From Diplonema japonicum (Eukaryota; Protista; Euglenozoa: Diplonemea): 64,000 bases of DNA. Positions within the stretch are counted from its first letter, which is position 1, and each line of letters begins with the position of its first letter. The notes under the pieces were generated by a model. It had not been told where the DNA came from, ran no database searches, and saw only the letters and a list, made by a program, of their open reading frames with translations. Positions 30,165-56,520 of this stretch are shown here, in pieces. The position numbers and the translations under genes were made by a program. The stretch is taken from contig OZ025754.1 in the NCBI GenBank assembly GCA_964019335.1, positions 62,001-126,000 on the forward strand, given 5' to 3'.

Positions 30165-31601
30165 CTATTCAACCAACTTCATAATGCTCCCGGTGATGCA
30201 CCCTACCTGCACGCATACACCAGTGATAAGCATGCACCATGCAGAAACAGTGTCTTGAAAGGATTCACGGGGAAGAGGGAGGTCCTGCTCACATGAAAGA
30301 GACACAGCCTTCAGGTAACACCCCGCGGGTATAATAAAGGTGAGCTGCGGCGAGGTGAAAGCTCCACCTACACCAACGACAGTCGAGAGAGAGTTGCAAA
30401 CGACAGCGAGGGCAAGGACAGGGGCAAGGATGGCAAATGTGAGCGCAACATGACGAGACAGAGCGGGTTGCGGGTCCCCGGGGTAGAACACCTCCAGCAC
30501 CACCGAACGGCAAGCAAACATCACCAAAGGAAACGCAAATATCAGATTGCAGCTCATCCCAATATACATCACCGCGATAACCGGCTGCCCAATATCATAA
30601 CACGCCAAAATTGAGCTTGCTCGTGAAGACAGCCCCCTCCACAGATCGTAACCCGATCCAGCTGCAGCGGTGTACATTAGTGCAACAGACGCCATTGCCC
30701 ATCCTGTGGCTCTGAGTATTTTACCGCAGGATTTTTCGTTCCCGTCATGTATGCTAAGCTCTTTCAGCATCGGAAAAACAGATATTTGACACACAAACGA
30801 GGACGAGATAATCGACACCGCCGAGAGAAGATTCTTGAACTCGTACTTCAAAAAGTAAAAATCGTCTCCTTCAGCAGTTTCCGACAGGTCTTGACAGGTA
30901 GGGTATCGTGTATCGGACCATTTTGTATAGTATATGTCGTACAAAACGCTGGACACCACGAATGCTGATACAAAAAAAGTTCCCATTAAGGATGTGATCC
31001 ATAGGTTGCTCACCTTTCTGAGTAGTGTAAGGGGTATAATGAGGACGACCACCACCACCGCCAGATACTCGTTTGGATAAGTTAAACGGCTCGCCAACGC
31101 AGGACATTGATCACCCACACTCTTCAAAAAATATTTCAAGGGGACTAAAAATGCTGTCATTGCCACGCAACACATTCCCACTAACGAGCTTTGTACTGCT
31201 ACCCTGCCAGCACGGCCGAAACATGCTCCACCAATATGTTCTAAATTGTATAAATCACGGTTTTGTCGAGGAGATCCGATGCTGTGGAGTAGTTTAAACG
31301 AGCGCAGCATCAAACCGACAGACACATACGTCAGGACAGCGAGGAAGACGATGATTAAAGCACCGACGGCCGCTCCACAATAGTCAAACGCCGCTGCGAG
31401 GGACAGGATGCCCACGCCCATGGTGGTTTGCAAGAGATTAAACACCACACCGGGTGTGCCGACAGCCTGCCCCGAGGCCTTATGCTTCGTTGGCTCTAAC
31501 AGAACTGAAACATCTTCGATAAAAGATGACAACGACCCTTCCGTCTCAACAGACTCCCCGTCCCCATCGACACTATCTGGATTCAGGTTGATGTCAAGCA
31601 T
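30165..31601 (-). CDS. Amino-acid transporter, Aa_trans/SLC38-like (possibly the 3' exon of a fusion with the upstream methyltransferase)
   Basis: VFNLLQTTMGVGILSL, SSFVCQISVFPM, FAFPLVMFACR, FIIPA; about 11 hydrophobic segments. Confidence 0.88.
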   Translation of the reverse strand: MLDINLNPDSVDGDGESVETEGSLSSFIEDVSVLLEPTKHKASGQAVGTPGVVFNLLQTTMGVGILSLAAAFDYCGAAVGALIIVFLAVLTYVSVGLMLRSFKLLHSIGSPRQNRDLYNLEHIGGACFGRAGRVAVQSSLVGMCCVAMTAFLVPLKYFLKSVGDQCPALASRLTYPNEYLAVVVVVLIIPLTLLRKVSNLWITSLMGTFFVSAFVVSSVLYDIYYTKWSDTRYPTCQDLSETAEGDDFYFLKYEFKNLLSAVSIISSSFVCQISVFPMLKELSIHDGNEKSCGKILRATGWAMASVALMYTAAAGSGYDLWRGLSSRASSILACYDIGQPVIAVMYIGMSCNLIFAFPLVMFACRSVVLEVFYPGDPQPALSRHVALTFAILAPVLALAVVCNSLSTVVGVGGAFTSPQLTFIIPAGCYLKAVSLSCEQDLPLPRESFQDTVSAWCMLITGVCVQVGCITGSIMKLVE

Positions 31602-31672
31602 ATAAGGGAGGGTGGCCCTGGGATATAAAAATTTTGAAAAAAAAAAAAAAAAAAAAAAAAGTTTTTTTTTTT

Positions 31673-32356
31673 TTACTGCTTCCCTCGTTTTGCATGTATG
31701 ATGTAAGCATGTTCCCACTCATCCGTGCAGTATGGGTGCGGCAATTTCTTTCTCGGGAGGATTTTTGTAGTGACGTTTAAGACGGCTGCCATTCGCTTCT
31801 GGAAGGCTAGCGTGAGTGCTTCATCGCGAACATGGACACCAATATAAACCTGCGCCTTTGGGGACGTTTCGAGAATCGCACCTATGGTGTGCAGGAAGGG
31901 GAGCACATAATCTTCAATATATATAACGTCGGTGGCAATTATTACATCGTAAGTGATAGGGGAGGATTCATTGAGGGATGGGATGTCGGTTTCGTGTTGT
32001 ACCCAGTCAAGTTGGTGGACTTGTACATCGTGTATGCCTGGGCGTCCTTCGCCCTTGATGCGGCCAAGGCCTTGTGAGATGTTGCGTTTCAGAGTGGGGA
32101 GCATTTCAGCCATTTCTGTAGAGACGACCCTTGCCCCTAGGACCGCGCAGGCCAGGCTGAGGTACCCTAGCCCTGCGCCGAGCTCTATGATGTTTTTTCC
32201 GCGCACGATTTTTTTCCCCTTGTCCCCGCTCGCGAAGTACCCCGCCAGCACCACCGCTGCGTCCCATACCCTTTTTGCTCCTGTATTGTCGACTTCGTCG
32301 CTGCCGGTCAGTTGGAATTCTACTCCGTCTACCGTGAAATCTTGTGATATCGCCAT
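31673..32356 (-). CDS. METTL21/Methyltransf_16-family SAM-dependent methyltransferase
   Basis: RVWDAAVVLA, IIELGAGLG, LDW, YDVIIATDVIY motifs. Confidence 0.88.
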   Translation of the reverse strand: MAISQDFTVDGVEFQLTGSDEVDNTGAKRVWDAAVVLAGYFASGDKGKKIVRGKNIIELGAGLGYLSLACAVLGARVVSTEMAEMLPTLKRNISQGLGRIKGEGRPGIHDVQVHQLDWVQHETDIPSLNESSPITYDVIIATDVIYIEDYVLPFLHTIGAILETSPKAQVYIGVHVRDEALTLAFQKRMAAVLNVTTKILPRKKLPHPYCTDEWEHAYIIHAKRGKQ

Positions 32357-33094
32357 TATTATTTTTTTTTTGGGGGGCTGGTATTTCTTTTTTTTTTCTT
32401 CTTCTTTACAAAGAAAATTTTAAAAAAACGAAATTCTTAAGAAGAAATGTAAATAAAAAAATTCAAGAAGGGGAAGAGGAATGGGAGGGGGGGGGAATCT
32501 CCTTTTCGTTGTGTGTTTTTTTTTTCTCTCTTAAAAAACTCATACCAAAAAAAAAGGGGGATGAAAAGTGCCAATCGGGTCTACTTTTTTTTTTATTTCG
32601 ATTTGTCTTATGAGGGAGAATGGCCTTTTTTCGTTTTTTTTTTTTTTTTTTTATTGTATGGTTCCACATTTATTTTGTACGGGAGTTAAGTTCCCTTTCG
32701 TTTAAAGAGGAAAAGAAAAAAGAAAAAAAAAGAAAAGAAAAAAAACAAGAGGCGGGGTGGGGCCGTGGGAGGGCGGAGATACAATCGTAGAAAAAGAAAA
32801 TCACAATCCAAGATGCAAAAAAAAAAGGCCCCCCTTCCCACTCTTCTGATTTTAAAAAACCTGCACCTTTGGAAGAAAAAAAAAAAGAAAAACGGAAGAG
32901 TATGAAGGAACTAAAAAAAAGGACCGAAAAAAAAACCCTCCCCGGGAAAAAAAAAAAAAAAAAATGTTATTAGTTAGATCAAGTATCTGTCTCTTTTTTT
33001 TTTTTTTAAACCCACCCCCCCCCCCCCCCCCACCTCATCCGCAAAACACTTTTAAAAAAAAAAGAAAAAGAAAATGCCTCATCTCCATGGTGGG

Positions 33095-33571
33095 CTAAAG
33101 CTTAGAAACACACGACGACATTTCCAGCCAGTGAGGGTCCCACACACTCGAGCAGGCCTGTAGGGCGGGGAAAGGCTCAATGGCCACAGGAACGTGAAGC
33201 TTTGCAGTAAGGTAGTTGTCCTTGTATTCTTCCCACTTCACCTGCTGCAGGGATGTGTCAGAAATGCCTGTTCCGGGCTCACCTGAAGCGACAAAGGCTT
33301 TGATGTACGCTTGGAACTGGCTTACAAAGGCCCTCTCAAACATAGTAGGTTCCTGCACAAAAGTTGATAAAAAAAAAAAAAAAAAAAAAAAAAATACCTT
33401 TGTCGGCATGTTGGGGTTGAACCACAGATGCGAGTGCACGGCTTGGTACATGGGTACATCGCACTTATAGACAAACGTCTTCGTTGACCTGGAGAGAGCC
33501 TCTGCCACCCTTCTCACGCCGCAACCGTAGAGCTGGTCCTGGGGTTGATATAGTGGGGATGGGAAGAGAAA

Positions 33572-33622
<51 letters not shown>

Positions 33623-36600
33623 ACACCGTTTTTGCCGCCAGTGCAGCATGCCACGAAGCGGATCTGTTGCTGTTGGTGGCCCGCTCTGCAAAATCTTCAC
33701 CTGTGGTTTGAGGTAAAAAAAATTATTATTTTTTTTTTTTTTTTCCCCCCATACTCAGATAGTGTCTCGAGATGACGCCCTCCGAAATGGGGTAGAACGC
33801 CCCCTCTGCCCACAGCCTCCATTGCTGCTCCGACGCGGAGTCCGGTGGTTGCTCCTGGTGGTTCATACTGCGCAGCCCGTCATCAAGACGGTACCCAATG
33901 ACAACAGGAACGGGCGCGTGCTGTCCGGCCTCAATGAGCCTCCAAGGGTGGTCCTTGATGTCCTTCCCATCAATGATCGGACCGTAAGGGCACGCTGTGA
34001 ATTTTTTTTTTTTTTTTTTTTTTTTTTTTCCCGTCACATACGATGCTCACCGCAAGTCATCCACGCGGCCCCACTACATCCCTCCTTTCCTTCCCTGCAC
34101 TTGTACAGTTGCGTGCCTGTTGTTGTGACAGATATGGCACGGGCTTGTTTCATGCACTTTAAGTCCCCCTTCGGGCACGTTCCCAATTCGGTGATGATGC
34201 TCCGTGACTGTGCGGCTGCCGTGTCGTACGTCTTCGCGGTGAAAGCGGACACAGGAGGGGACTGCATGACAGCCTTGTGGAACAACCCGTACGAACCAGG
34301 CGACGTGAGGTGAATGGCAACAGATGCCGCGCCCGACGACTGCCCGAAGATGGTAACGCTTGAAGGATCCCCTCCGAATGTTTTGGCGTTCGCCTGCACC
34401 CATTGCAAAACCATACGCTGGTCCAACACACCGAAATTAAAGGTCTCGTTCAGCTCCGGGTGGTGAAAGTACCCCATACTGCCCACACGGTAGCTAGGAG
34501 TCACCACAACCACACCCTCGACAGCGGATACAACGGACTTTCCTATGTGACGATCTGGGCGGGAGTCTGACCCACAGCCGCCATGGAACCATACCACTAC
34601 CGGGTAGAGCTTTTCACCTGCCGCACGACGCTCTGCTGGGATATCCACATCAACGTACAGACAGTCCTCAGACCCACCTGAACTGTCGACGCATCCAGGC
34701 CTTCTCCGTGATTCCCTGACACCTGACCACCCTGTTGTGTATGGAATCGGGGGGCTCCATCGTCTCTCGCCCGTCGGTGGTTCCGCGTACGGTATCCCCG
34801 CAAAGGTGTACCCCACCGCGCTGCCATATTGGTCGTAGAACGCCTCGCCTCGCACGATACCTGTTGGGATGCGTACTTTGATCTCGTCGGTGTCGAAAGA
34901 GGCCTTCTGCGTGGAGAGCATTGACGGGATGAGCCACAACGCCATGATCACCGTGAAGATCATGAGGTACGGTTTCATGCCGGACTGTCTTGTGTAGATG
35001 ACGGATGAACCGGAGGCAACCTGCGAGCCGGCGAGCTCGGGGGCAACACGTTTTGCGGGTTCTGCGGGAAGCCCCGCGTAGATTTCGTCTTCACCCACCT
35101 CGCCTCCCTTGAGGACTTGTGAATTTTCCATCACGACACCGCCGTCGAGGATTATACCGCCTGGCTGGACGAGAGCGCCTGCACGCATGGTCGCCTTGTC
35201 TTTAAGTTCTGTCTTGGCAAGCTTTATGACCATGTTTTCAACAGTGTGGCATGTCACGTCACATTTTACCCCGACGGAGCAGTAATCGCCTGCTGAGAAC
35301 AAATCGTATTCCAAACCGTACCCGAGCATGCACACGTCCTTGCCCATCTTAGACCCCATCGACCGGAAGAACCAAATGATGAATGGAGTGCCGCCAATGT
35401 CGTCTAGAAGCTTCCCGATCGCCTCTTTAACAGCCATCATGATGACCCATTTGCGGTGGTACTGTCCGTAGAAAGGGTAGTTGCCTTCCTTGTACTTTCC
35501 AACCACGCACCATTTGAACACGATGAACAAAAGCGTCTCGAGGATTTGAACCACACAATACGCGGGCGGGGTGACCAATATGGTGATGGCCCATGACAGC
35601 GCGACAGAATAGCTATCCTCTGCTTGAAAGACCTCCAGCTGCTCCATCCATATCCAGACCAATATGGTAAGTAGATCTGCGACTGCAGGAAGCGGGGCGA
35701 TAAACATAACGGTCAGGATATTGAAAATATTGAACATCCCCCACGTGTAGTTATTCTGATGGTTTTCAAGCGCGCGGATTGCCATGTCACGCTCGACGGG
35801 TGGAAGATGTGAAAGGTTCGCCTTGTTCGAAGGGTCGCCGGATAGAACACGAAGCTGAACGGGCTTGCCCTGTTGGTTGCCGGTTGAGATCGACAGATCG
35901 GGGAACTTGTGGAACTTTGCTCCAACAGTCGAGGATCCACACAAAGCACCGCGTCCTACAACACACCCTGGCATCAGAGTGGAATGATCCAGTACCTGCG
36001 CGCCTTGCTTCATGAACACCTTTCTTGACTCATGATGGTCTGTTGGACACACTGTTACGTTGGAACCGAACACAGAATCTCGCCCTACCGACAATAAATC
36101 GAATTCCAGGATTTCAAGGTAATCTGTCTGAACCTTGAATCCCATGTTGACTCCGAGCATTCTGTACTTGATAGCCAGAAGTTCTGTGTTGATCCATGGC
36201 TGTGTGGCAAATCGGTACTGTTGGTGGTGTGTGAGCCGCTCTAGGAACCACTTCCGTAGGTCGAGGGAAAACGACGGGCTGTTTCGCCCCGGTTTGAACT
36301 TCCCGATGCATATCCATTTGTAAGCCACGACCATTAGGAAGAAAGTCTCCCCGACCACGAGCTTTTCTACCCACGGGATGCATAGGTATAGCAGGATGTA
36401 CTTGAGATTTGATTCATTGGAGAAACTGGACAGGCCGACCTCCCACATCCATTCCAGGAAGAGTAACGCGGGGATGAACGCGATGGTTTCCATAAGCAGG
36501 ATCAGCGGGACCAGGCACACTCTCGCGAGGTTTTGAGATGATGAAATCCCGCTCCATAAACGGGAGCCTTTTCGGAGGTCTCTGGCTGACATTCCTGTCG

Positions 36601-39600
36601 TGCTCAACGGACCGACTTCCGTTCCCGGAGCAAGTCTGGTTCCTTGTGTAACCCACCCAACCGGCAACACCCTGCAATGCTTGTTGATATGAATCGGCCA
36701 CAACGTTAAAATCCCGTTTTCGACAGAATGGGGTATGATCGTCGCTTTCTTCTCAACAACAACATCATCCTCGATGGTGATGAGGTCTGGATCGAAGACA
36801 TCATCAGTTCCTATTGACACCCTGTCGCCGATCGAGGCACCCATCGCCGATAGGTATTTGTTGAACAGCACCGTGTCCTCTACGAACGGGGAAATCATTT
36901 TAACGCTGGACTTGTGGAGATTGTTCACCAGCCACCATCGGAGGTAGAACGACCCCCACACAGGATACTCCCCAGGGTTCACCTTCCCCAACAGCAAGTT
37001 TTTCAAGGTAACGGTGTACACACACACCGCCAAAATCGTCAGCGAGATTACTATTGGAGCGAACCTCAACGCAGCCCATTTCCCCTCCGAGTAGTAAATA
37101 GAGTAGAGATACATGAACCCGGGTAGAAACGCGGCTGTGGATGCAAACGAGTCGACAAGCAGCCCGACAGCATGGAAAAGAAGAACCTTCGGGGATGTTG
37201 ATGAGTACCCACCCCATCTTTTGTATCTGTTGCCCCCAATGACGGGTCCGGTTTGCTTTGAGGTGTCTGGTTTGTGCTCGTCGCATAGCGCACCGATTTT
37301 GTGGATTGTCGGATGTTGATACATTGCAGTGGAGGGGATCATGGACCCGGTTTGCTTTCGTATCATCGTCGTGACCCTCCCGGCAAGCAAGGAGTTCCCT
37401 CCAAACTGCATGAAATTGCTGTGCACGTCGATCTTCTCAGCGCGGTTCAAGATCTTCTGCCACACAGACTCCACGATTAGCTCGTTGGGTGTCTCCGCGT
37501 ACACCACCGTTTTCTCGCTGTCATCGTCGCCAGCTTGCGGTGCTCCACCTTTCGGAGGCTTCGGAAGCGCCTTCCTGTCCAGCTTCCCTCTGTTAGTCAA
37601 AGGGAGCCTCTCCAACGGCATAATTACAGACGGCACCATGTACTCTGGGACTTTTTCTTTCAAGGTTTTCAAGAGACTTTTGACGTCGATCGTCTTGGGT
37701 TCCACATATGCGACAATTCTTGCTGAAGCGCCGGTTCCATCAACAAGAACAGCGACCTTGATGACATCTTTGCACGCACCGATTATGGACTCGATCTCTC
37801 CTAGTTCAATACGAAATCCGCGGAGCTTCACTTGGTGGTCGACACGGCCTAGGAACTCGAGGGTTGACCCGTCGGGCCGCCACCTTGCACAGTCTCCTGT
37901 TTTGTACATACGATCGCAGTCGCCCGTTTTCCTGAACGGGTTTGGAACGAACTTCTCGGAGGTCAGCTTCGGCAAACCGAGGTACCCTTTCGCAGTGGTA
38001 ACACCACCGAAATGCAACTCCCCAGGAACCCCCGCAGGTACAGGATTACCCGTTGCGTCAAGAATGTACACCTTCACATTGAGCATCGGCTTTCCAATAG
38101 GGATCTTTGTCAGAGTGTGTGAGTCCTCTCCAGGAACCAGTTTTGGGCATTCCCAATATGTCATATCCGCTTCGGTCGGGCCGTAGAGATTGTGCAGGCG
38201 GGTGGTGTCGGGGTCGAAGACCTCAAAGAATTTGTAGCATGTTTCAACGGGAAGCGCTTCGCCGCAGCAGATTACGTGCTTCATGTCTGTCGTGTAGTTC
38301 AGCCCTTCGCCGATCATGTACTCGATCAGCATTGCGAGCATAGACGGGACGTATGTGCAGACCGTTACCTTCTGTAGATTCGTGACCTGGACTAGGTATT
38401 CGGGGTCCTTCTGACCGCCTTCCTTGGTGATGACAACTTGCGAACCAAAGGGGATGGGCCAGAACAGCTCCCACTCCGATATCCCGAAGGTGAACGGGGT
38501 CTTATAGATCATCTTGTCAGATGGGGTTATGGGGTAAAAATCTTGCAGCCACTGCGCCCGTTTTACAAGCCCGCGGTGGGTCACCTCGACACCCTTTGGA
38601 AGCCCTGTCGTTCCTGATGTGTAGAATATGTAAACGTTAGTGTCAGGGCTCTGATTGAGTTCCTGCCTACGTTTTTGTGCAACGGCGGGAATGTCGACAA
38701 GGTCGGATGAAACGGTGTCGATCATGATCTTTGTCCCGCGAAAACCTGTTGGGATTTTATTTTGAAGCCTGCTGTGTGTCAGCAACACAGTGGCCTTCGC
38801 ATCGTTCATCATGTGAAGAATCCTGTCCGCAGGGTAGTCCGCGTCGATCGGCACGTAACACCCGCCTGCTAATAATGTTCCATATATCGCGATAAGCTGG
38901 AAGTGCGACCTCTCCATGAGAATAGGAACGGCACTGTCGACGCCGATCCCAAGCCTGCGGAGCTGTGTGGCGACAGCATAACACCTGCAATACAAATCGC
39001 CGTAGGTCATAGTAAGCCACAGAAGCGTTCCTGGTTCGTGATAGGTTACACATGGTGCGTTGGGGTACTCGATTGCCTGATCTTCAAAGAGATCGTGGAT
39101 GCACTTCCTGTCAGGGTACACTGCAGAAGTATTATTGAACTCTTCGATCACACGCTTTGTCTCGTCGCTGCTGCAGATCGTTAGGTCGTGCCACGCTACG
39201 CTGCTCCTGTTTATGAGCACTTCACCGACAAGGACAGAATAGTGCTCCGCTAGCCGCGAGATGGTCAGCTCGTCGAAAACTGATTTACGGAACTTAAACC
39301 CGATCTTACTAGCACGTAGATCGACGACCACCTCGATGTCAAAATCCACCTCGTTATGATCTGTCAGAACACCGTGCTCGAAATCCGGATATTCCTCGTC
39401 ACTGCATGTGAACAATACCTGAAATACTGGCGAGTATGATTGGTTGTCAGGTGATATTTCTGATGCGAGTGTAGCCCATGGAAGGGCGGCGGAGTGCTTT
39501 ACAAGCTCGGGTTTCTTCTTGTGGACCGTTGATGCCACCGCATCGAAGGTTTTCTTCCCGATTTGCGTTTCTGTGTCGTCCGGAAGCTCCAGACGAAGCG

Positions 39601-39889
39601 GCAAGAAATTTCTATTGCGCATTGCGCACCCCACCACTACATCTGTTGTTCGACTATACTTTGCTAGCAGCACCTGCAAAGCTGTGGAGAGAACTGTGTG
39701 AACAGTTATGCCCTTTCTGTAGCCAATATCACCCGGCAGCTGTATCGTATGGATTCCGCCTTCCCTGTCTTTGCTCACAGCCGGCGTTCGATGCCTGTCG
39801 GTGATCAGCTCCGTGAGAGGGGGCGCACCATCTAGATACCCCTTCCAGAACTGCAATGCAGTATGCCCTTCAGCATCGATTCCCGACAT
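33095..39889 (-). CDS. Membrane-bound NRPS-like protein: partial C - A - PCP - 3x Pls/TIGR02353-type repeats - TM - type-B carboxylesterase (~2183 aa; introns 33995-34050, 33701-33754, 33539-33626, 33353-33397)
   Basis: A-domain cores YTSGTTGLPKG, NLYGPTE, GEL, YKTGD, GRVDHQVKLRGFRIELGEIE, NRGKLDR; PCP FMQFGGNSL; three K(W)xxxGKxxxG..RxW..(M/L)GxxxG..DL repeats with TM segments; esterase FAGIPYAEPP, SEDCLY, WFHGG, GGDPSSVTIFGQSSGA. The spliced length is 6552 nt, in frame. Confidence 0.9.
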
Positions 39890-40742
39890 AGGGTGGGGAT
39901 GGGGGTGGGGGGGGGTTTCCCCTCCTCTGATTATGTGTTGGTTTGGAAAAGGGGAAAGAGGAGAAAGAACACTAATATAAAGAGGGTGGGGGGGGGGGGG
40001 GGAGGGCTATTTGGGTTGGGAGAAAAAAAAATGATAATCTTTAAATAAAAAAAAAATACACTTCACCAAAAAAAAAAAAAAAAAAAAATACACTTCACCT
40101 TTTTATCTCTACCCGATATCCTACTCTTAATTAGACCCCTGATTAGACACATATTAATGCCATTATAATAATCGAATAATAAGAGAAGAGTTTTTTAAGG
40201 TAGATATATGCGGTATATCGGCCGCCGTATACCGGCTATCAACCCCTCTGCATCAGCAGCCTGTAAATCTCTGTAATATACAAATCATTAGCACTTAGCC
40301 TTTTCACAGCATTCTGGTTTATCCAATTCCGAGGCCAGAAATTAGGTGAATACTTTAACAGAGACACTTTCAAAGGCACCAGTTTCGTTCCCAGGAATAA
40401 TTATAATAAATCCTGCAAAACCCGATCGACGACGCGGCGTGCCCTGCGAAGGGGGATAGGTTTTGCAGCTCCGGCGTCGGGTCACGAAGTTCGAGCCGTC
40501 CCTGACGGCGGCGGAGCTGTGCACGGTGACGGACTTCCTCGCGGCGGTGAAGAAGCGACCCGGGGCTGGGCGGCGCCGCGTGCCCTGCGAGGGGGATAGG
40601 TTACGAGTTACATTACTAACGCTCTTTACTTTTTTTTTTTATATATATCGTTCTTTCTTTCTTTTTAATTTATTTTTCTTTTTTTTTTTAAATATCACGT
40701 TCACCCCCCCCCCCCCCCCCCCCCCCACACACACACCGCCCA

Positions 40743-40852
40743 GACCTCTTCCTCTCCCGCCTTCGCAAATTCAATGGAACATCCGCCTTATAGAAAATTA
40801 AAAAAAAAAAGAGGCGGATATTCCATTCTGCGTAGGCGGGGGGGAGGGGGTC
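40743..40852. repeat. Imperfect palindrome / hairpin
   Basis: CCCGCCTTCGCA..AATGGAACATCCGCCT pairs with AGGCGGATATTCCATT..TGCGTAGGCGGG around an A-rich loop. Confidence 0.6.
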
Positions 40853-41932
40853 GGCCGTCGATGCACCTATTATAAACGACCCCCGCCGGGGATTCGCATC
40901 CCATAAACTTTCTTTTTTTTTTTTTTTTTTCCTTCTTTTGCAAAAATCTGCTACTTACATAACTCGCATTAACGGGAGGTGTCGTTGCGCACCTGGGGTG
41001 TCACCCCTGCTGCCCGAGTGGGCCCCTATTGGAGCCCTTGCGGACCACTAGTTCGTACCTGTGTGTGAGTTAAATATTAAAGAAAAAAAAAAAATTGTGA
41101 ACAACAAAAAACAAAAAAACAAAAAAGCCCTTTCACTGTGCCGTTGACCAACACTTGTAAAAGTGAAATGCTGTAGCAAAAAGAAAGAAGAGCAAAGGAA
41201 CTGTTATAGCATGCTTGTTCTCGGACCTTAACAACTTTCGAGCCTCTCAGTACTATTGTCTTTTTGCCTATCGGCAAGAGAGGCACCACAGTGTGTGCTG
41301 GGGTAGCAAATAATAATAATAATAATAATAACGTCCGGAAGTAAAAACAAAAGGGGGCCTTTAAAACTGTTGGTGATAACATAGCTATATATATATATTT
41401 TTTTTTTTTTCTTTTGACCCTACCTTTGAAAATACAATCCCAGGGTGGTTGTGGTAACTGAACGTTCTTGATCTGCACAACTTGAACGGGAGGGCACCGA
41501 ACGTTCTCCGGGACAAATTCAATGGAACAACAGCTTATATCCTGTGGGCATGTGGGCTGCCCCTGCTTACCGGACTCACTTCTCATTTTTCTTTGTTTTC
41601 TTTTTATTTTATATCCGAGTTTTTTCTGAGTTGGGGATAACGAACACGAAACACAAAAAAACAAACTTAAATAAAACAGAAAATTGAGAAATCGGCTGGG
41701 TGCCTCATAAAATTGGGTTGGTCACAAAGTGTTTTTTTTTTTTTTTTTTCCTTTTCTTTTTTTTCTTGTTTCTGACCTACCTTTGACCCAGACGGATTTG
41801 ACACTAGGCCGCGGAAGCTTGACATCTTTGATATAAACAAATTCAATGCAACATCCGTCCTTCGGGCTCTGCGCGGGCATAGCTTCAACCATTTTATTTC
41901 AGTTACCTCTATGGAAGCTATGGAGTACAACA

Positions 41933-41975
<43 letters not shown>

Positions 41976-42995
41976 CTTCTTCTTCTTACCCTTCCCTCAA
42001 ACCTGAAATAGAAAATCACATCAAAAGCATGTTATCGGCCCCTGACGTCGGCTGTGTCTAGTAGGTACTCCTAAGCGCAATGAAGCGAAAGATTGAGGTG
42101 CTTTTTGTGCACTCGAGTCAAATCGCCGCGTGCCCTCTGCATGTTGCAGGTGCGCTTAACATTTCTGCAAAGAAGTCATCAGTACTTTCTCGCATTCATT
42201 GCATTATCACCCCCTTTTCTTTTCTTTTCTTTTTCTTTTCCTCCTGGAAGTACCGTGTGTTTGGGTTTTTCATATGGAATATATAAAAAAAAAAAAAAAA
42301 AAGAAAGCAAGGGATATTAAACCAGAGAAGAAGAAAAAAAGAAGGGGGAAAAAAAAAAAGGTGTCTTTGAAGGGAACCTGCAGTATGTGACAGGATCGCC
42401 TAACGACAATCAACTCATCTAGTGTTTGATCCCTTCTGTCGTGGTAGTGCCTTAGGCCCGTCGTGGTATCTTTTCAGCAGCTTGGGCGTGAAACCAACTA
42501 GCGAGTTGTTGAGGATGCAATGCGTTCGCATTTGCTCCTCTAGGATCGAGTGGGTGACCTTCAAGAACGCGAAGATCGGACGAGTGGAGTAACCAAAAAG
42601 AAAAAGAAAACTAAGGGGAGGAAAGAGAAAGAGTTCCACTTTGAGAACAGGAGCCTCACATCAGGTATCGATTTTGGCAAGGGGAGGGGAGAAGGTCTTC
42701 CCCCCCCACTCATCAATACACTTTGAGCAGGGTGTGCAAACCGCACACTTGCTTGGGGGGGGGGGGGGGGGGGATCGTTTTTTTTTGGAGGAATGGGGCG
42801 GTGGCACATTTAGCGTTTGTGCAAATCAAAAAGCTTTTCAACATCCCTTTTTTTTTTTTCTCTTTTTGTTTTATTATTATTATTTTTATTTATTTTTTTT
42901 TTTTTTTTTTTGTTGTTGTTGTAAAAAGGTAAAAAAAGAGCTGGTCTTCGACTCTTTATTTACCGAAAAAAAAGAGAAAAAAAAAATCTGTTTTT

Positions 42996-45900
42996 TCACC
43001 AATCCCCCGATCTCCAGGAAGTGCGAGCGTTTTGCTTTTTCTTTTGTTTCTCCTCTTCAGTCTCCGGCACGTCGTTCACCAGTTCGTAACTAATTCTGTA
43101 GCAACCTCTCGGTACCTTTTCCAACGTTGCATAAGCCGCTGAAGAGACTACAGCAGTTGCTTCTCCAGCACACGACACCACGAATTTGAGCAACTGTGGG
43201 GATACGAAGGCTGGTGATGCATGCATGACAGTCAGAACCACGAAGCGCAGCAACATGGGCACTTTTTCAGGGAATCTCATGTATTTCTCAACCAGCGTGG
43301 GAAAAGCAGACATGTCTAGACCCTCGTAGCAAGGCTCGGTGACAAGCTCGCCAGCCCGGCCCACCTTCCCCAAGACGTTGGCCGTGGTTCTCAGAATGTT
43401 GTCCAGCTCCCCTTCATCCACCGACTTTAAATTTCTCGCCCACTGCTTCCCGATCACTCCGTAAGCACAAACAACTGTTGAAGGCGTCTCGACCAAGACC
43501 TGGATCGCCTTCTCGCACTCCACTGTGGGTACATTACATCTCTTCTCTGATGTGATGCTCTTCAAGATACGCTTTGCGGTCAAGCATGCCTCAACGTTTC
43601 CTTGAGCAAGCGCGACCGAGATTTGTTTCTGTTTCGTCTTGCACACTTCTGCAAGCAGTCCCGGGCGGTATGGTGTCAGCGCGCCCACCATAGCCGTCAG
43701 GAGCTCCGAATCCTTCGCGGCTATAAGATGCTTTACCACACCTTCCGCGTCTTCTTCTGCCGGCGGGTGGTCCGTGACCGACAGCATCTTGAAATACCTC
43801 ATCAAAACCGTTTTCGCTACCTCGAATAAACTCGGGACATCACTGAACGACGCCACCAGTTTGGCCAACCCCGGGCACGCACAAGGCGGCCACGCTTTTG
43901 AGTTCAATGTGGTCACCCCGTTGGTCCCTGCCAATGATGCCAGAACCTGGCCAGCAATATATATATTCTCGTCAGTTCTGGAGAGGGAGATGGACTGCAT
44001 ACGGTCCCACAGGGCAGGTGCATCTTGTAGAACAGGCGTGGCAACTAAGGAGCACAGCAGGGCAACCTTTGTTGAGGTGAACATCATCTCTTCTGCGGTT
44101 GAAACACATGAATCGCTGTCTGAGCCGAGCAGGACCCACCCGCCTTCCTTCCACTCCATCTCCACGAACCTCTCGATGTCTGCTGGTGCAAGTAGCTTCA
44201 CACAACACCTTCCTAGTTGAGACCTTGCGCTTGCCTTGGTCGAGCTGCGTTGCAAAACGTCCTTCAGCAGGCCGGCTGCGGTCTTTGGTGGTAGGCAGGC
44301 CAAGGCACATGCTGCGGAAGGGATGGCCACCTTGCTGGAGACACCAACATCGATGTGTTGTGTTATGACCCTCAACGCCGCTTCTCCTTCGTGTACCGTC
44401 CGCAAAGCTAGCAGGAGTTCCAGGCACAGCTGGGCTGCCCTTGACCCGTGAATTGTGGCAGTTGTCAGCTTGTCTGATTTTACAACGTTGTCCTGCTCCT
44501 TCGTGGTGAGCTTCCTCGTCGCTTCCCTGTCCGTGACTGCTTGCTTGAAGAAGATATTGAAAGGGTGTTTGTCATCGGTGATTTTCGGGATGTTGGGTGC
44601 GCTCCCCATGGCGCAGGCCACCCAGAGCTTTTCAGCCTTCGAACGGTGATCGTAGTCCTTGTTCGTGTTCCAAGCACTGTCGCAACTTAGGTGTGACACG
44701 TCGAAACCAGTGGGAACCACCCAGTTGTCCCAGAGATATTGTTGAACCTTGGGCGGCAATAGGTAGACCGATGATGACACTGTTGTGGTCTGCCCACCAA
44801 AACGTGCTTTACGCACACCGGTTGCAAGGCCAGGGAGGAGCCAAGGAAGGGTTTTAGACATGGGTCCCATCAGCCGTGGAACTTCGTTGGGGCGGTGTTC
44901 TAAGACGTACTTCTGGAAGGTACTGCTTTCCCTGAACAGCTCGGACGGGGTGACCTTCCCAAGCCCCGCGGAGAGCATCTGGTCCAGACGCCTCAACCTG
45001 AAATGTTTCGGGTCCAGCATGGCGCTGACGGCGATCTCAGCATGTTTGATGTCGACGTGCTTCTTGATGAACTCAGCTGTCTCGGGGAGCTCGCGGAATC
45101 CAGTGGGCAGGCTCAGGTTTTTCTCGGGTGTCGAACAGTTCTCGAAAAGGTCCAGCAACGCCCGTATTACCCTTTTTTTGTTCTCGGAAATTGGTGAGTG
45201 TTCCGCCGCTTGGCGCACATAACGGGATACACCGTCGCAGCTAATTTTCGCTTTTTTCATCCTGTCGATGAGCCCCAAGACAGGGTTGGCGGCCCATCCT
45301 TCAAACTTCGCGTTGGCGGTTTTGGTTGAGTTCTTCAAGGCCTTCGTGTTCTTGTGTCGTTTGGCTGCACGGTGACCGCGCTGAAACCTGAACCGAGGTC
45401 TAGCTGTTTTGGACGAAGCCGTGTGGATACGTTCTGGATTGTCACGTTTTGGTTCACAGCGTATCATGCATATCCCCACGCCATCTTTCGGGGAGATAAC
45501 ACCGAGTGCGTGTTTGAAAATTCCTTTCGTGCTCGGAGATGGGCTCCCAATTGCGTTCAGGAGTTCCGTTATGTCGTAAGGTGTGTAGGAACTCTCCCAA
45601 GTATATGTGCTCTTGGGGATAGCCGCCCAGTTTATCACCGCCTTCACAGTATCTTCGACAAATTCGAATTCAATACCCGTCATATCATCCATGTTTGCGA
45701 TGAGATGTGTCTTGCACATTGCTACGACGTCTGAAGGCACCGCGCCTGTTTGTTTGTTGGCTTGGGCCAACAGTGCAGAACAGCAGACTTGTAATATCGG
45801 TCGTTGATCTTTGACAGACTTTGGAGGGATCGCTGCAATGTACTCCGATATGCGTTTTGCCCCGTCTTCTGGAGAGTAGTGCCGTCCGACCTTCTTCAGC

Positions 45901-48068
45901 GTTCTTTCAACGACCTCTCTGTACGCGGGCCATTCCCTCCCTTGGTCTTCAGAGACTTCACGGAGCTCCTTCAGGATGTCCCCCGAGGTTTCAAATGTGA
46001 TCTCCTCGTCTAGGCTTGGCAGGAACATCTCAGCAAAACCCGCGATCCTCGGGTTCTGAAGAAGGATCGGGAACCCACCGATGTGCGCGATGATCTCTTT
46101 CAGTTTTTGCATGTTTGACTTCACCATCTTTTCCTCGTCGGTGCCCGAGAATGAGTAGAAGTAAGTATACTTGCTGCTCTTCGAAAAAGCGTCCTTTATA
46201 TATTCGTACATAACGTCACCCGCGTGTTTGGGGGCGTTGGGAATGTCCAGGATTTTTAGTGTCGACACGGCCTTTCCAAGGGATATTATGTGATCTTTTG
46301 CAGTAGCCACGCTGGCCGTCAGCAGCCTTTTCAAGATATGCCTGGCGAAGGTTAGCAGTTTGTGCTCCTTGACTCGTTTAACCGCGGCGTACTGCAGAGA
46401 AATCGTGGCAGCCCATGTGCCCCACGATGTCATCCAAGGCCCATCTCCCCATTTCAACGAGTATGTGAACAGTTCTTCCAGCGGTCTTACTGCAGAAGAC
46501 GGGATCGCCATGATGTCTGATGTTAGTAAAGTTTCGACAACTGGTGCTTTAACGCGCGACTCTTCCTTCGATAGTCTACTTGTGATCCATGAGAGGATAG
46601 GGGTTAACCTGTCGCTCTTGCGGCTTCCGAGCCCGCAGAACCAAAGTGAGTTGAACACGGTCACACGGAGCTTCGGATCGCGTGTGTCAGCAAGTTTCTT
46701 CAAAACAGGTTCAGCATAGACAGTGGGCATGTCACGCAGAAATTCGCACCGCTCGGCAGTGTCCAAATCCTTGAATTCATCCGTTGCAACGTGTTCGGTT
46801 AGTACAGATGTGACGAGATCTTTTGGGGCAGCGATGCTTCTGCGTACTTCGGCCTTTTCCTTGATGATCTCCGGGTAGAAGGGGAGCAGTTTTTGAAACA
46901 CGATTCTAACCGGCTCGTATACTTTCAGACACCCCACTGCAACGTAGCCCCTCTTCAAGTCCGTATCTATTATGGTGCGCAGGAATTTTTCGTCAGGGTT
47001 GAACACGCCCTTCGGGAATGTTTCAAACAGCTTGCAGACTTCGACAGTGAGGCGCTTGTCGTCCGTGTACTTTCCCACCAGACCCGCCATAGCGTTGGAG
47101 ACCGCCTTGTTGTTGTTGTTAAGATCATCTGTAAGCCATCCCGACAGATATTTGACGGTTTTTTGAACATCCTTGTCCGACGACACAGTATTCAAAAACG
47201 GCCCCGTGAGCTTTCTCAACGCTTCCGTCCTGTACTCGGGGTTTTTCCGTTGCTTCCTCAGACACCATAAGAAAGCGCCGTTGGCTTTCGGCAGTTCGTT
47301 TAAAACGTCTATAGGGAGGTGTCTGACAAGCGGTCTTGAGATAAACCACACCCCCCTGTCGGAGGCCTTGTGGGTTTTCAGGGCTTTTAGGAGCTCGGTT
47401 GGGTGGCTCGAAGCAAGCTCTCTGCAGGACCTGAACCACCTGTAGTCGAAGTCCTTCGTCGTTTTCAGTATGGTGAACAGGAACTCGGGGTATCGCACCG
47501 CTACTGACTGGTAGACTCCTTCAAGGTCTGGGTTGTTGCCCTTCCCTCTCAAGCGCTTGCTGCATTTTCCAAGGTGTTTTGTTAGATCGGCGAGACGGGG
47601 GAGCCACCTGGAGGTGAGCTCTTTGTGGATAGGATTCTTCTTACCCCGTTTCAGAACAACTATAGCGGCGTGCGCACCACCAAAGATAGGGTTCTTGACA
47701 ATCTCGGTCAGGACTTCGTCTGTAGGCAAGCGGAGAAAATTCACCGCGAAGCACCTCAGGTTGAGGGGGAGATTGGTGTTCAAGAAGATTTTGTTGAGTA
47801 GTGACTGGTTCATCTTTGCAATACACTGAAGCGCCCTGCAACGCACAACCCAAGACTGGCTCTCCTCCACCACTTTTAATAGACACATCTCTTCTCCGGC
47901 ATTCATGGCTGCTACCACCCCATATACAGCAGTCCAGGTGTCTTGGGACGGCAGTGTCGCAAATATCTCCGTCACGATGCGGGCCCTATCCTTCCCCAAT
48001 ACCGCCGCTCTTCGCATCCTCGTGTTGTGGTTCACAAGGGCCTCCATCCTACTGCGAAACTGTGTCAT
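42996..48068 (-). CDS. Large intronless hypothetical protein (1690 aa), probably alpha-solenoid/HEAT-like
   Basis: Uninterrupted 5-kb ORF with an ATG after poly-A, helical Leu/Ala/Lys-rich composition and no catalytic motif recognised. Confidence 0.8.
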   Translation of the reverse strand: MTQFRSRMEALVNHNTRMRRAAVLGKDRARIVTEIFATLPSQDTWTAVYGVVAAMNAGEEMCLLKVVEESQSWVVRCRALQCIAKMNQSLLNKIFLNTNLPLNLRCFAVNFLRLPTDEVLTEIVKNPIFGGAHAAIVVLKRGKKNPIHKELTSRWLPRLADLTKHLGKCSKRLRGKGNNPDLEGVYQSVAVRYPEFLFTILKTTKDFDYRWFRSCRELASSHPTELLKALKTHKASDRGVWFISRPLVRHLPIDVLNELPKANGAFLWCLRKQRKNPEYRTEALRKLTGPFLNTVSSDKDVQKTVKYLSGWLTDDLNNNNKAVSNAMAGLVGKYTDDKRLTVEVCKLFETFPKGVFNPDEKFLRTIIDTDLKRGYVAVGCLKVYEPVRIVFQKLLPFYPEIIKEKAEVRRSIAAPKDLVTSVLTEHVATDEFKDLDTAERCEFLRDMPTVYAEPVLKKLADTRDPKLRVTVFNSLWFCGLGSRKSDRLTPILSWITSRLSKEESRVKAPVVETLLTSDIMAIPSSAVRPLEELFTYSLKWGDGPWMTSWGTWAATISLQYAAVKRVKEHKLLTFARHILKRLLTASVATAKDHIISLGKAVSTLKILDIPNAPKHAGDVMYEYIKDAFSKSSKYTYFYSFSGTDEEKMVKSNMQKLKEIIAHIGGFPILLQNPRIAGFAEMFLPSLDEEITFETSGDILKELREVSEDQGREWPAYREVVERTLKKVGRHYSPEDGAKRISEYIAAIPPKSVKDQRPILQVCCSALLAQANKQTGAVPSDVVAMCKTHLIANMDDMTGIEFEFVEDTVKAVINWAAIPKSTYTWESSYTPYDITELLNAIGSPSPSTKGIFKHALGVISPKDGVGICMIRCEPKRDNPERIHTASSKTARPRFRFQRGHRAAKRHKNTKALKNSTKTANAKFEGWAANPVLGLIDRMKKAKISCDGVSRYVRQAAEHSPISENKKRVIRALLDLFENCSTPEKNLSLPTGFRELPETAEFIKKHVDIKHAEIAVSAMLDPKHFRLRRLDQMLSAGLGKVTPSELFRESSTFQKYVLEHRPNEVPRLMGPMSKTLPWLLPGLATGVRKARFGGQTTTVSSSVYLLPPKVQQYLWDNWVVPTGFDVSHLSCDSAWNTNKDYDHRSKAEKLWVACAMGSAPNIPKITDDKHPFNIFFKQAVTDREATRKLTTKEQDNVVKSDKLTTATIHGSRAAQLCLELLLALRTVHEGEAALRVITQHIDVGVSSKVAIPSAACALACLPPKTAAGLLKDVLQRSSTKASARSQLGRCCVKLLAPADIERFVEMEWKEGGWVLLGSDSDSCVSTAEEMMFTSTKVALLCSLVATPVLQDAPALWDRMQSISLSRTDENIYIAGQVLASLAGTNGVTTLNSKAWPPCACPGLAKLVASFSDVPSLFEVAKTVLMRYFKMLSVTDHPPAEEDAEGVVKHLIAAKDSELLTAMVGALTPYRPGLLAEVCKTKQKQISVALAQGNVEACLTAKRILKSITSEKRCNVPTVECEKAIQVLVETPSTVVCAYGVIGKQWARNLKSVDEGELDNILRTTANVLGKVGRAGELVTEPCYEGLDMSAFPTLVEKYMRFPEKVPMLLRFVVLTVMHASPAFVSPQLLKFVVSCAGEATAVVSSAAYATLEKVPRGCYRISYELVNDVPETEEEKQKKKQNARTSWRSGDW

Positions 48069-55519: not shown

Positions 55520-55552
<33 letters not shown>

Positions 55553-56520
55553 TTGTCTGCAACAACAACAAGATCATCATCATCGTCATTATCATTATCA
55601 GCAGCAGCAGCAGAGTGAAACGTGGGGAAGGAATCCATCTGTGCAGCGAGGAGGGAGCTTGGGAGCGGGGGTGTCCCTGTGTCCTTCCGCAGCACGGGGG
55701 CGACAGGGTCGAAGATGGAGTCCGGGTCTGTGGCCTCCTTGGAGGGGTGGCTGGGGAGGTTGGTGCGGAACACATCCCACACACGGTTCGTCCACACGTA
55801 GACCCCCGCGAACAGGTCTGACAGCTCCTCCGTCGGCTTGTTCCTTCGCGGCGTGTGCGTCTCGTCGCTGCTGCGGTCGATCTCCACCCTTGCCGCCTCG
55901 CCGTCCTTCCCCAGAGCCCTCACCAGGAAGCTGATGTCCACGTCCACAGGCTTTGCAGTCGTGCTCTCGGGGTGCGGAGGGGTAGCCTTCCCCTTCAATG
56001 TCTTCAGGGTCGTCTTGCACGTCGCCACAGAGATGGGGACCGCCTCCTTCACCCCTGCATCCGAGCCCTTGTACAGGGACAGGCTGTAGGTCCCCTCGAA
56101 GCCCCACGAGTGCTCCGTCACCTTCAGCACCGTCTTCGTCGACTTCTTCGTTGACTTCCTTCCCCTCTTCGCCGCCGTCTCCGTCACCAGCTCCACAGCA
56201 GGTTCCACCTCCTTCGTCTCCTTTCCGAAGTATTTGCAGCTCGTCTTCATCTCGAACCGCAGCATCACCGCCTCCCCGTCCCTTCCCCAGCCGACAGCCT
56301 TCTCCCGCACCGAGTCTGTCACCCCTATCTGCCCTGCTGCGTTCCACCATCCCCCCACAGCCACGGCCCCGAGGAACTCGGCCAATAAATACTTGTCTTC
56401 GTACTTGTGCTCCGCCTCCCGCAGCGTCAGCACAGGGTCCTTCGCCTCCCCAAGGATCCGCTGCACCTTCTGCACAACCTTCTCTAGCTTCGCAGTGAAG
56501 GCAAGGTCGCTGTAGAACAT
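53728..56520 (-). CDS. Intronless GC-rich hypothetical protein (930 aa)
   Basis: Long ORF with strong G/C-ending codon bias. It has a conserved-looking core ARQFSCY...[35 protein letters not shown]...LTKEVELTQ; function unknown. Confidence 0.8.

What the first reader, a model, noticed from the sequence alone, without database searches (positions are those of the whole stretch)
33095..39889. Pls-type membrane NRPS fused to a carboxylesterase in a protist: candidate polymer synthase plus hydrolase in one polypeptide
Seen: one spliced ORF (~2183 aa) contains the C-terminal half of a condensation domain (no HHxxxDG), a complete A domain, a PCP (GGNSL, Ser833) and three TM-associated repeats. These are followed by one more TM helix (YLMIFTVIMALWLIPSML) and a full type-B carboxylesterase (GQSSG Ser1851; candidate acid in GYRLDDG; candidate His in AVHSH). 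Established: A-T-(TM/C-like)x3 is the architecture of epsilon-poly-L-lysine synthetase Pls and related TIGR02353 homopolymer synthetases, whose degrading enzymes are normally separate genes. Inference: the extra TM would put the esterase on the opposite membrane face from A/PCP, where an extruded polymer emerges, allowing it to release, trim or recycle the chain. I do not know of this fusion being characterised.
Basis: partly seen in the sequence, partly recalled or inferred. Interest (0 to 1): 0.88.

Follow-up and report, generated by a model that had tools for sequence, protein, structure and literature searches.

The report
Membrane NRPS fused to esterase-like domain
A marine protist (a diplonemid) really does encode one 2186-residue protein that joins a membrane-embedded, polylysine-synthetase-type enzyme to an outward-facing esterase-like domain. 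That domain has lost its catalytic serine in every related species, so it is probably a binding or scaffold module and not a conserved polymer-cutting enzyme.

Summary
One minus-strand gene (39889-33095, five exons, 6558 nt, 2186 codons) encodes:
- the C-terminal half of a condensation domain;
- an A domain and a PCP (Ser833);
- three (2 TM + left-handed beta-helix) repeats that match TIGR02353;
- a seventh TM helix;
- a type-B carboxylesterase fold.

A spliced cDNA-type contig of 6619 nt covers the whole gene, and diplonemid orthologues carry the same fusion. It is therefore one gene, not two.

Three corrections:
1. Intron 1 uses the GTATGT donor at 34041, which adds three residues.
2. The A domain has Gly in place of Asp235 (code GIWTICLMTK). 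The TIGR02353 score (212 bits) is below the curated cut-off (423). The gene belongs to an uncharacterised eukaryote-wide branch of Pls-type enzymes and is not a polylysine synthetase.
3. The esterase nucleophile Ser1851 is present only in this species. All seven orthologues have Gly or Ala there, and their oxyanion motif and His loop are degenerate. Eight stand-alone paralogues in the same genome keep the Ser.

TM parity, flanking charges, conserved cysteines and TM7 sitting where the paralogues have a signal peptide all place the domain outside the cytosol. A hydrolase role is possible here but is not the conserved function. I found no paper on this fusion.

The parts
33095..39889 (-). Whole coding region. 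Five exons: 39889-34042, 33994-33755, 33700-33627, 33538-33398 and 33352-33095 including the stop. 6558 coding nt = 2186 codons.
   Evidence: ORF list and sequence. The run X7 contig lies on all exons and lacks exactly 234 nt = 47+54+88+45. The exons are colinear with P0001.
33995..34041 (-). Intron 1 (47 nt, GTATGT...AG). The other introns are 33701-33754 (54 nt), 33539-33626 (88 nt) and 33353-33397 (45 nt). All are GT..AG and carry long A or T runs.
   Evidence: Net skips of 47, 142 and 45 nt in X7 record 18; sequence.
39155..39859 (-). C-terminal half of a condensation domain (aa 11-245), without the HHxxxDG half. Nothing coding lies upstream.
   Evidence: Pfam PF00668, profile 194-453/456. 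All orthologues start at the same point. The upstream region looks non-coding.
37583..39088 (-). Adenylation domain (aa 268-769). Specificity positions are G235 I236 W239 T278 I299 C301 L322 M330 T331 K517. The Gly469 codon at 38483-38485 replaces Asp235.
   Evidence: Pfam and TIGR01733 at 373 bits. In the alignment to LgrA A1/A2, FTFGISEWE lies opposite FSFDGS and IFDISV. The code is conserved in orthologues.
37289..37471 (-). Carrier (PCP) domain aa 807-867. Ser833 in GGNSL has its codon at 37391-37393.
   Evidence: Pfam PF00550. G830-L834 are invariant. Three PPTase genes are present in the genome.
35045..37192 (-). Pls-type C-terminal region (aa ~900-1615): three repeats, each of two TM helices plus a left-handed beta-helix domain. 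TM helices lie at ~902-925, 939-965, 1124-1148, 1170-1195, 1385-1410 and 1429-1463.
   Evidence: TIGR02353 scores 98.6, 45.6 and 83.9 bits for the repeats one by one, and 212 bits in all. Hydropathy. Weak matches to hexapeptide and O-acetyltransferase proteins.
34910..34972 (-). Seventh TM helix (aa ~1640-1660), a former signal peptide turned membrane anchor. The Met just before it is not conserved.
   Evidence: Hydropathy in all orthologues and alignment. Stand-alone paralogues have a signal-peptide-like N-terminus at this same position.
33098..34882 (-). Cholinesterase/carboxylesterase-like ectodomain (aa ~1670-2186, across four introns). Codons: Ser1851 at 34337-34339 (TCG); acid Asp at 33879-33881; the two His of AVHSH at 33434-33436 and 33428-33430.
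   Evidence: Pfam PF00135 at 217 bits. Alignment to Ces2e and AChE. Alignment to C. rugosa lipase. Comparison with orthologues and paralogues.

Best explanation
This is one real, expressed gene, conserved across diplonemids. It encodes a single-module, membrane-embedded NRPS-like enzyme of the Pls type with a cholinesterase-like domain on the extracytoplasmic side.

Inferred mechanism on the cytosolic side. The A domain has Gly instead of the alpha-amino-binding Asp235 and a hydrophobic pocket (GIWTICLMTK). It activates a carboxylic acid that is not an ordinary alpha-amino acid and loads it on Ser833 of the PCP. The three beta-helix domains, held at the membrane by six TM helices, pass the acyl group to a free acceptor. 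They may do this once, or repeatedly as Pls does to build a chain.

The N-terminal half C domain cannot catalyse condensation. It is most likely a retained structural platform for the A domain.

Origin and role of the outer domain. A secreted carboxylesterase gene was fused behind the synthetase, and its signal peptide became TM7, so the esterase fold faces outward or into a lumen. In the family as a whole this domain has no canonical nucleophile. Its conserved role is therefore non-hydrolytic: binding or holding the exported product, or dimerising the synthase as non-catalytic cholinesterase-like domains do in neuroligins and thyroglobulin. In this species alone Ser, Asp, His and HGG are all present, so hydrolytic activity is possible here.

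Shown: gene structure, domains, conservation of the fusion, and residue states. Inferred: topology, substrate class, and the role of the ectodomain.
For: One gene:
- A 6619-nt contig of run X7 lies on all five exons, lacks exactly the four introns, and reaches about 17 nt above the ATG.
- The same fusion is found in D. ambulator, Rhynchopus humris, Flectonema neradi, Namystynia karyoxenos and three ENA genome contigs, at 54-76% identity.
- The Met before TM7 is not conserved.

Pls type:
- Three repeats each match TIGR02353.
- There are six hydrophobic helices in pairs.
- Bacterial Pls/PosA proteins match over the whole region, for example P0030 at E 7e-33.

Substrate:
- Asp235 is Gly by alignment with LgrA.
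- The code is conserved in all orthologues and in a wider family found in algae and dinoflagellates. Bacterial Pls-type proteins have DAESIGTVTK instead.

Outside location:
- Seven TM helices.
- Arg/Lys on the N-side of TM7 in all orthologues.
- Conserved Cys pairs of the cholinesterase fold.
- TM7 sits where the paralogues have a signal peptide.

Non-conserved catalysis:
- The nucleophile is S in the window, A in D. ambulator, and G in Rhynchopus, P0003, Flectonema, P0005, Namystynia and P0053.
- All 8 stand-alone paralogues examined keep G[QE]S[SA]G.
- The tree makes Gly the parsimonious ancestral state, with 2 steps against 4.
- HGG is degenerate in the orthologues outside Diplonema, and their His loop is 3 residues shorter.
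Against: - In this species the triad and oxyanion motif are formally complete, and four runs agree on the Ser codon. The domain may therefore be an active hydrolase here.
- The acid Asp and one His are invariant in all orthologues. That hints at some retained chemistry.
- Ser-ancestral with repeated loss cannot be excluded.
- Topology rests on hydropathy and rules, not on a dedicated predictor or an experiment.
- No substrate, product or subcellular location is known.
- The contig comes from short-read assembly, and its run is not on record as RNA. An additional esterase-only mRNA made by internal trans-splicing is not excluded.
Confidence: 0.6

Rival explanations
1. The ectodomain is an active serine hydrolase that releases, trims or recycles a polymer made by the synthetase part as it emerges from the membrane.
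For: In this species Ser1851 in GQSSG aligns with the nucleophile of Ces2e and AChE. HGG is present. The acid Asp aligns with the column I recall as the catalytic Glu341 of C. rugosa lipase. The canonical His is present. The domain lies on the exit side.
Against: Seven orthologues lack the Ser, yet they keep the domain at 42-69% identity. The fusion is therefore not maintained for canonical hydrolysis. Ser is probably secondary here. It is also unknown whether the synthetase makes a polymer at all, given Gly235 and a TIGR02353 score below cut-off.
Confidence: 0.25
2. A Dlt-like relay. The outer alpha/beta-hydrolase domain acts as an acyltransferase, taking the acyl group passed through the membrane part and placing it on a surface acceptor.
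For: The order of parts resembles DltA/DltC/DltB/DltD (activation, carrier, membrane part, outer hydrolase-fold protein). This rests on my own knowledge and was not tested. Asp and one His are invariant.
Against: An acyl-enzyme relay needs a nucleophile, which most orthologues lack. No MBOAT-like part is present. The membrane part is Pls-type.
Confidence: 0.05
3. Two neighbouring genes (a synthetase and a secreted esterase starting at the Met before TM7) that merely share a frame, or an assembly or read-through artefact.
For: The sequence MKPYLMIFTVIMALWLIPSML looks like an N-terminal signal peptide. Diplonemids trans-splice (own knowledge), so an internal mRNA start is conceivable.
Against: There is no stop between the two parts, and one spliced contig spans both. 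The open frame across the junction is kept in seven other taxa, three of them as single Trinity transcripts, and the Met is not conserved.
Confidence: 0.03
4. The ectodomain is a decaying passenger with no function of its own. It is retained only because losing it would disturb the folding or targeting of the synthetase.
For: It is the least conserved large domain after the half C domain (42-69% against 61-82% for the Pls part), and its active site is eroding.
Against: It has been kept full-length, with its cysteines, an invariant Asp and an invariant His, across the Diplonemidae-Hemistasiidae split. The paralogue without an esterase shows that the synthetase needs no such tail.
Confidence: 0.07

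Closest known systems
Epsilon-poly-L-lysine synthetase Pls and the Pls/PosA family (TIGR02353), including the fungal epsilon-PL synthetase of Epichloe (PMC7179176)
   Same: A single A-T module followed by six TM helices that enclose three tandem soluble beta-helix domains. All three repeats match the family model.
   Different: - The score is half the curated cut-off (212 against 423 bits).
- The A domain is closer to ordinary NRPS A domains (LgrA A2 at 317 bits) than to the Pls A domain 7wew (155 bits).
- Asp235 is Gly.
- There is an N-terminal half C domain.
- There is a seventh TM helix and an esterase-like ectodomain.
Uncharacterised eukaryotic Pls-type proteins with the F-G-[ILV]-S-E-W-E motif (Aureococcus, Aureoumbra, Cymbomonas, Gymnodinium smaydae, Effrenium, and the diplonemid paralogue at C19 of this genome)
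   Same: The same A-domain code type (G.W..C.MTK) and the same Pls-type C-terminal region at 33-47% identity.
   Different: None of them carries TM7 or the esterase fold. A clear half C domain appears only in the diplonemid members, with a weak trace in P0072.
Non-catalytic cholinesterase-like domains (neuroligins, the thyroglobulin ChEL domain)
   Same: The type-B carboxylesterase fold is kept with its disulfide cysteines while the nucleophile Ser is replaced by Gly. Exon 2 also gives weak matches to neuroligin and thyroglobulin chains. That these proteins carry Gly for Ser is my own knowledge.
   Different: Here the domain is the C-terminal ectodomain of a biosynthetic membrane enzyme in a protist. 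In this one species the Ser is present.
Secreted type-B carboxylesterases of the same genome (at least 23 loci)
   Same: 33-48% identity. L006 has the same GQSSGAASV motif as the window. A signal peptide sits where the fusion has TM7.
   Different: They are stand-alone proteins of about 550 aa. All eight examined keep the Ser and the canonical H-x-x-E-L-P-Y-V-F loop.

Membership tests
Pls/PosA family NRPS (TIGR02353) | Whole-protein score at or above the curated cut-off of the family model (423.1 bits) | tested here: not met
   206 bits on exon 1 and 212 bits on the C-terminal region alone.
Pls/PosA family NRPS (TIGR02353) | A-T module followed by six TM helices around three tandem soluble domains, with no TE domain and no complete C domain | tested here: met
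   Pfam domains. Paired hydrophobic helices. Each repeat matches the model. Only a catalytically incomplete half C domain is present.
Pls/PosA family NRPS (TIGR02353) | A domain that binds an alpha-amino acid (Asp235) | tested here: not met
   Gly is at the Asp235 column in the alignment with LgrA A1/A2. Bacterial family members have D at this position.
Pls/PosA family NRPS (TIGR02353) | Product is a homopoly(amino acid) made by iterative transfer to a free acceptor | not testable with these tools
   This needs biochemistry.
Type-B carboxylesterase / cholinesterase (PF00135) | Pfam match above the gathering score | tested here: met
   217 bits against a cut-off of 27 on exon 1, which covers profile positions 3-265. 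Exon 2 continues positions 280-333.
Type-B carboxylesterase / cholinesterase (PF00135) | Nucleophile Ser in G-x-S-x-G | tested here: met
   Met in the window: Ser1851 aligns with the Ser of GESAG in Ces2e and AChE. Not met in seven orthologues, which have Gly or Ala.
Type-B carboxylesterase / cholinesterase (PF00135) | Catalytic acid after strand beta7 (the x-[DE]-G motif) | tested here: met
   The second Asp of GYRLDDG aligns with residue 341 of the C. rugosa lipase chain, which I recall as its catalytic Glu. It is invariant in orthologues and is D or E in paralogues.
Type-B carboxylesterase / cholinesterase (PF00135) | Catalytic His in the H-x-x-[ED]-[LI] loop | tested here: inconclusive
   The loop is 3 residues shorter than in canonical paralogues. 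The first His of AVHSH fits the canonical column but is N, L or N in three orthologues. The second His is invariant. Exon 4 alone finds no solved structure.
Canonical NRPS elongation module (C-A-T) | Complete condensation domain with HHxxxDG | tested here: not met
   Only profile positions 194-453 of 456 are present. The protein starts there in all orthologues.

The most novel reading that the evidence does not exclude
The G235-type Pls-like proteins are a eukaryote-wide, uncharacterised family of membrane synthases found in diplonemids, pelagophytes, dinoflagellates and a prasinophyte. They would make and export a non-peptide product, for example an ester-linked or omega-amino-acid chain or an acylated surface molecule. 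Diplonemids would then have added a cholinesterase-like receptor or handling domain at the exit. That would make this the first biosynthetic enzyme with a built-in, mostly non-catalytic cholinesterase-fold ectodomain.
Probability: 0.2. Interest if true: 0.85.

Novelty: new variant of a known kind. Interest (0 to 1): 0.62.

Why it matters
Pls-type enzymes are the only NRPS-like machines known to work in a membrane and release free polymer, and how the product leaves the cell is unsettled. A version with a fixed extracytoplasmic domain at its C-terminus marks the exit side. It offers a natural handle for studying export and product capture.

The wider family lacks the alpha-amino-binding Asp and is spread over ecologically important marine protists. 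This points to an unknown product class.

The esterase-like domain gives a graded natural series (Ser, Ala, Gly at the nucleophile position). That series can be used to test when an enzyme fold turns into a binding module, outside animals.

Tried and rejected
- Upstream exons that would complete the C domain. The 2.6 kb above the ATG is low-complexity and non-coding, and the orthologues start at the same residue.
It is rejected by the 47-nt net skip in the spliced contig.
- An esterase translated separately from the Met before TM7. The Met is not conserved.
- A solved Pls membrane-domain structure for comparison. No chain matches beyond weak hexapeptide-transferase hits and a chance ABC-ATPase hit.
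- Exon 4 against solved structures, to fix the His. No hit.
- Literature on diplonemid NRPS, Pls-like proteins in protists, or NRPS-carboxylesterase fusions. Nothing relevant.
- Structure prediction to test the sidedness of the ectodomain. Not run, because the tool returns no coordinates, so it could not answer that question.
- Functional linkage with neighbouring genes (amino-acid transporter, methyltransferase). There is no evidence beyond adjacency.
- The joined five-exon protein.
Full report
**Gene and expression**

- The minus strand carries an ORF of 1951 aa from the ATG at 39889. The 2.6 kb upstream is low-complexity and non-coding.
- Downstream, four short exons continue the frame through GT..AG introns rich in A or T runs.
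- Contigs of four public runs were laid on 33001-39000. One contig of run X7, 6619 nt long, lies on 33081-33354, 33404-33539, 33757-33992 and 34042-39000. Over that span it lacks exactly 234 nt, which is the sum of introns of 47, 54, 88 and 45 nt. Its remaining 906 nt would reach about 17 nt above the ATG. It is therefore a spliced, cDNA-type contig that covers both the synthetase and the esterase parts.
- The contig shows that intron 1 is 33995-34041 (donor GTATGT), not the GTGAGC donor at 34050. The coding length is 5848+240+74+141+255 = 6558 nt, or 2186 codons.
Every search was done exon by exon, and the joined protein was never built.
- No run is on record as RNA, and contigs cannot exclude an extra internal mRNA start.

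**Domains**

- Pfam on exon 1 gives Condensation 11-245 (profile 194-453 of 456), AMP-binding 268-637, AMP-binding_C 698-769, PP-binding 807-867 and COesterase 1670-1923. Exon 2 continues the COesterase profile.
- NCBIfam gives TIGR01733 (A domain, 373 bits) and TIGR02353 (Pls/PosA) at 206 bits in three stretches.
- Taken one by one, the three repeats score 98.6, 45.6 and 83.9 bits against TIGR02353. The whole region scores 212 bits, against a curated cut-off of 423.
- The repeats also give weak matches to hexapeptide O-acetyltransferases.
- Hydropathy shows paired helices before each repeat, at about 902-925 and 939-965, 1124-1148 and 1170-1195, and 1385-1410 and 1429-1463. A seventh helix lies at 1642-1660. 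The same pattern appears in every orthologue.

**Conservation of the fusion**

- A search with residues 880-1951 found six proteins of 1977-2277 aa, at 54-76% identity and 97-100% coverage. They carry the same Pfam set, including PF00135.
- Their sources are Diplonema ambulator, Rhynchopus humris, Flectonema neradi and Namystynia karyoxenos transcriptomes, plus three ENA genome contigs. The window is therefore from a diplonemid close to D. ambulator.
- A search of 1.84 billion cluster representatives found only this cluster and one 868-aa fragment (P0053) that span both the Pls part and the esterase part.
- All orthologues begin at the same residue, so the half C domain is a stable feature. 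The Met before TM7 is not conserved.
- Exons 2-5 are colinear with the D. ambulator protein to its last residue.
- The same genome holds a paralogue without an esterase at C19 (1682 aa; half C, A, T, Pls part) and a third, more distant Pls-like gene at C23.

**A domain**

- In the alignment with LgrA, FTFGISEWE lies opposite FSFDGS (A1) and IFDISV (A2). Asp235 is therefore Gly469.
- Using the standard motif anchors, which I took from my own knowledge of the GrsA numbering, the code is GIWTICLMTK.
- The code is identical or nearly so in all orthologues. It is of the same type (G.W..C.MTK, motif F-G-[ILV]-S-E-W-E) in about 18 further clusters. Those clusters that I looked up or that carried a source name are from Aureococcus, Aureoumbra, Cymbomonas, Gymnodinium smaydae and Effrenium.
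- Bacterial Pls-type hits have DAESIGTVTK and relatives.
- The A domain scores 317 bits against LgrA A2 but only 155 bits against the Pls A domain 7wew.
- From memory, and as a lead only: Gly at position 235 is known from A domains that take 2-hydroxy acids or anthranilate. The invariant Glu at 238 leaves room for an amine placed elsewhere on the substrate.
- The PCP Ser833 is invariant, and the genome encodes three PPTases.

**Esterase-like domain**

- In the window, VTIFGQSSGAASV aligns with VTIFGESAGGTSV of Ces2e and VTLFGESAGAASV of AChE. Ser1851 is therefore the canonical nucleophile.
- At the same ungapped column, D. ambulator has Ala. Rhynchopus (from both genome and transcriptome), P0003, Flectonema, P0005, Namystynia and P0053 have Gly.
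- At least 23 stand-alone carboxylesterase loci exist in this genome. The eight that I examined all keep G[QE]S[SA]G.
- The HGG oxyanion motif is HGGC in the window and in D. ambulator, but HEGC, PSGC, HAGC and PGGC elsewhere.
- The acid is the second Asp of GYRLDDG. It is invariant and aligns with residue 341 of the C. rugosa lipase chain, which I recall as that enzyme's catalytic Glu.
- The His loop is three residues shorter than the H-x-x-E-L-P-Y-V-F loop of the paralogues. The first His of AVHSH fits the canonical column but is Asn, Leu or Asn in Rhynchopus, Namystynia and P0053. The second His is invariant.
- A maximum-likelihood tree rooted on the paralogue gives (Namystynia, ((Flectonema, P0005), ((window, D. 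ambulator), (P0003, Rhynchopus)))). Gly is therefore the parsimonious ancestral state, with two steps against four. The window's Ser codon is TCG, one step from an Ala codon GCG.
- The domain is kept at 42-69% identity, compared with 61-82% for the Pls part.

**Sidedness**

- The beta-helix domains must meet the PCP, so they are cytosolic, and each follows a helical hairpin. One further helix then puts the C-terminal domain on the other side.
- Arg/Lys cluster on the N-side of TM7 in all orthologues.
- The cysteine pairs of the cholinesterase fold are conserved.
- TM7 lies about 15 residues before the first strand, exactly where the stand-alone paralogues have a signal peptide.
- This also explains the origin of the fusion: a secreted esterase gene was fused behind the synthetase, and its signal peptide became an anchor.

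**Reading**

- The fusion is real and old, and no paper in the library searched describes it.
- It works like a Pls-type enzyme but fails two membership tests, the model cut-off and Asp235. It belongs to an uncharacterised eukaryotic branch.
It cannot be the reason the fusion is conserved, because all the other species examined lack the nucleophile.
- A non-catalytic role outside the membrane, in binding, retention or dimerisation, is the best-supported conserved function. It is an inference.

Noticed in passing
G000:C23:477000-486999 (L015: 565-3231 and 3399-7061, + strand): An ORF with polyketide-synthase AT and KR domains is followed directly by a 1220-aa ORF with two PP-binding domains and a Pls-like hexapeptide/TM region. 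This may be a PKS joined to a Pls-type membrane domain.
   Followed up: partly
G000:C19:21500-31499 (L014: 1520-6568, +): A paralogue of the finding without an esterase: 1682 aa with half C, A, T and Pls-type region, 45% identical. It is the counterpart of P0007 and P0052 of other diplonemids.
   Followed up: partly
Proteins P0010, P0012, P0055, P0058, P0063, P0070 and others: A eukaryote-wide family of Pls-type proteins has Gly for Asp235 and the motif F-G-[ILV]-S-E-W-E. It occurs in pelagophytes, a prasinophyte, dinoflagellates and diplonemids, and all members that carry a source name are called hypothetical or carrier-domain proteins.
   Followed up: partly
Own genome, at least 23 loci (e.g. 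C9:319254-319958, C3:180022-180822, C30:361933-362598): A large expansion of stand-alone type-B carboxylesterases of about 550 aa with signal-peptide-like N-termini. One pair lies in tandem on C30, at 87010 and 89234.
   Followed up: partly
window 30165-32356 (-): Directly downstream on the same strand lie a lysine-methyltransferase-like gene (Methyltransf_16) and an amino-acid transporter (Aa_trans). All large ORFs from 24 kb to 64 kb run on the minus strand.
   Followed up: no
window 42996-48068 (-): A 1690-aa ORF directly upstream of the finding has no Pfam match at E <= 0.001. A 930-aa ORF at 53728-56520 likewise has none.
   Followed up: no
window 33000-34030 and 39900-42400: Introns and intergenic DNA carry very long homopolymer runs: A or T runs of 25-60 nt, and G or C runs of 15-25 nt. 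Short-read contigs of three runs break at them.
   Followed up: no
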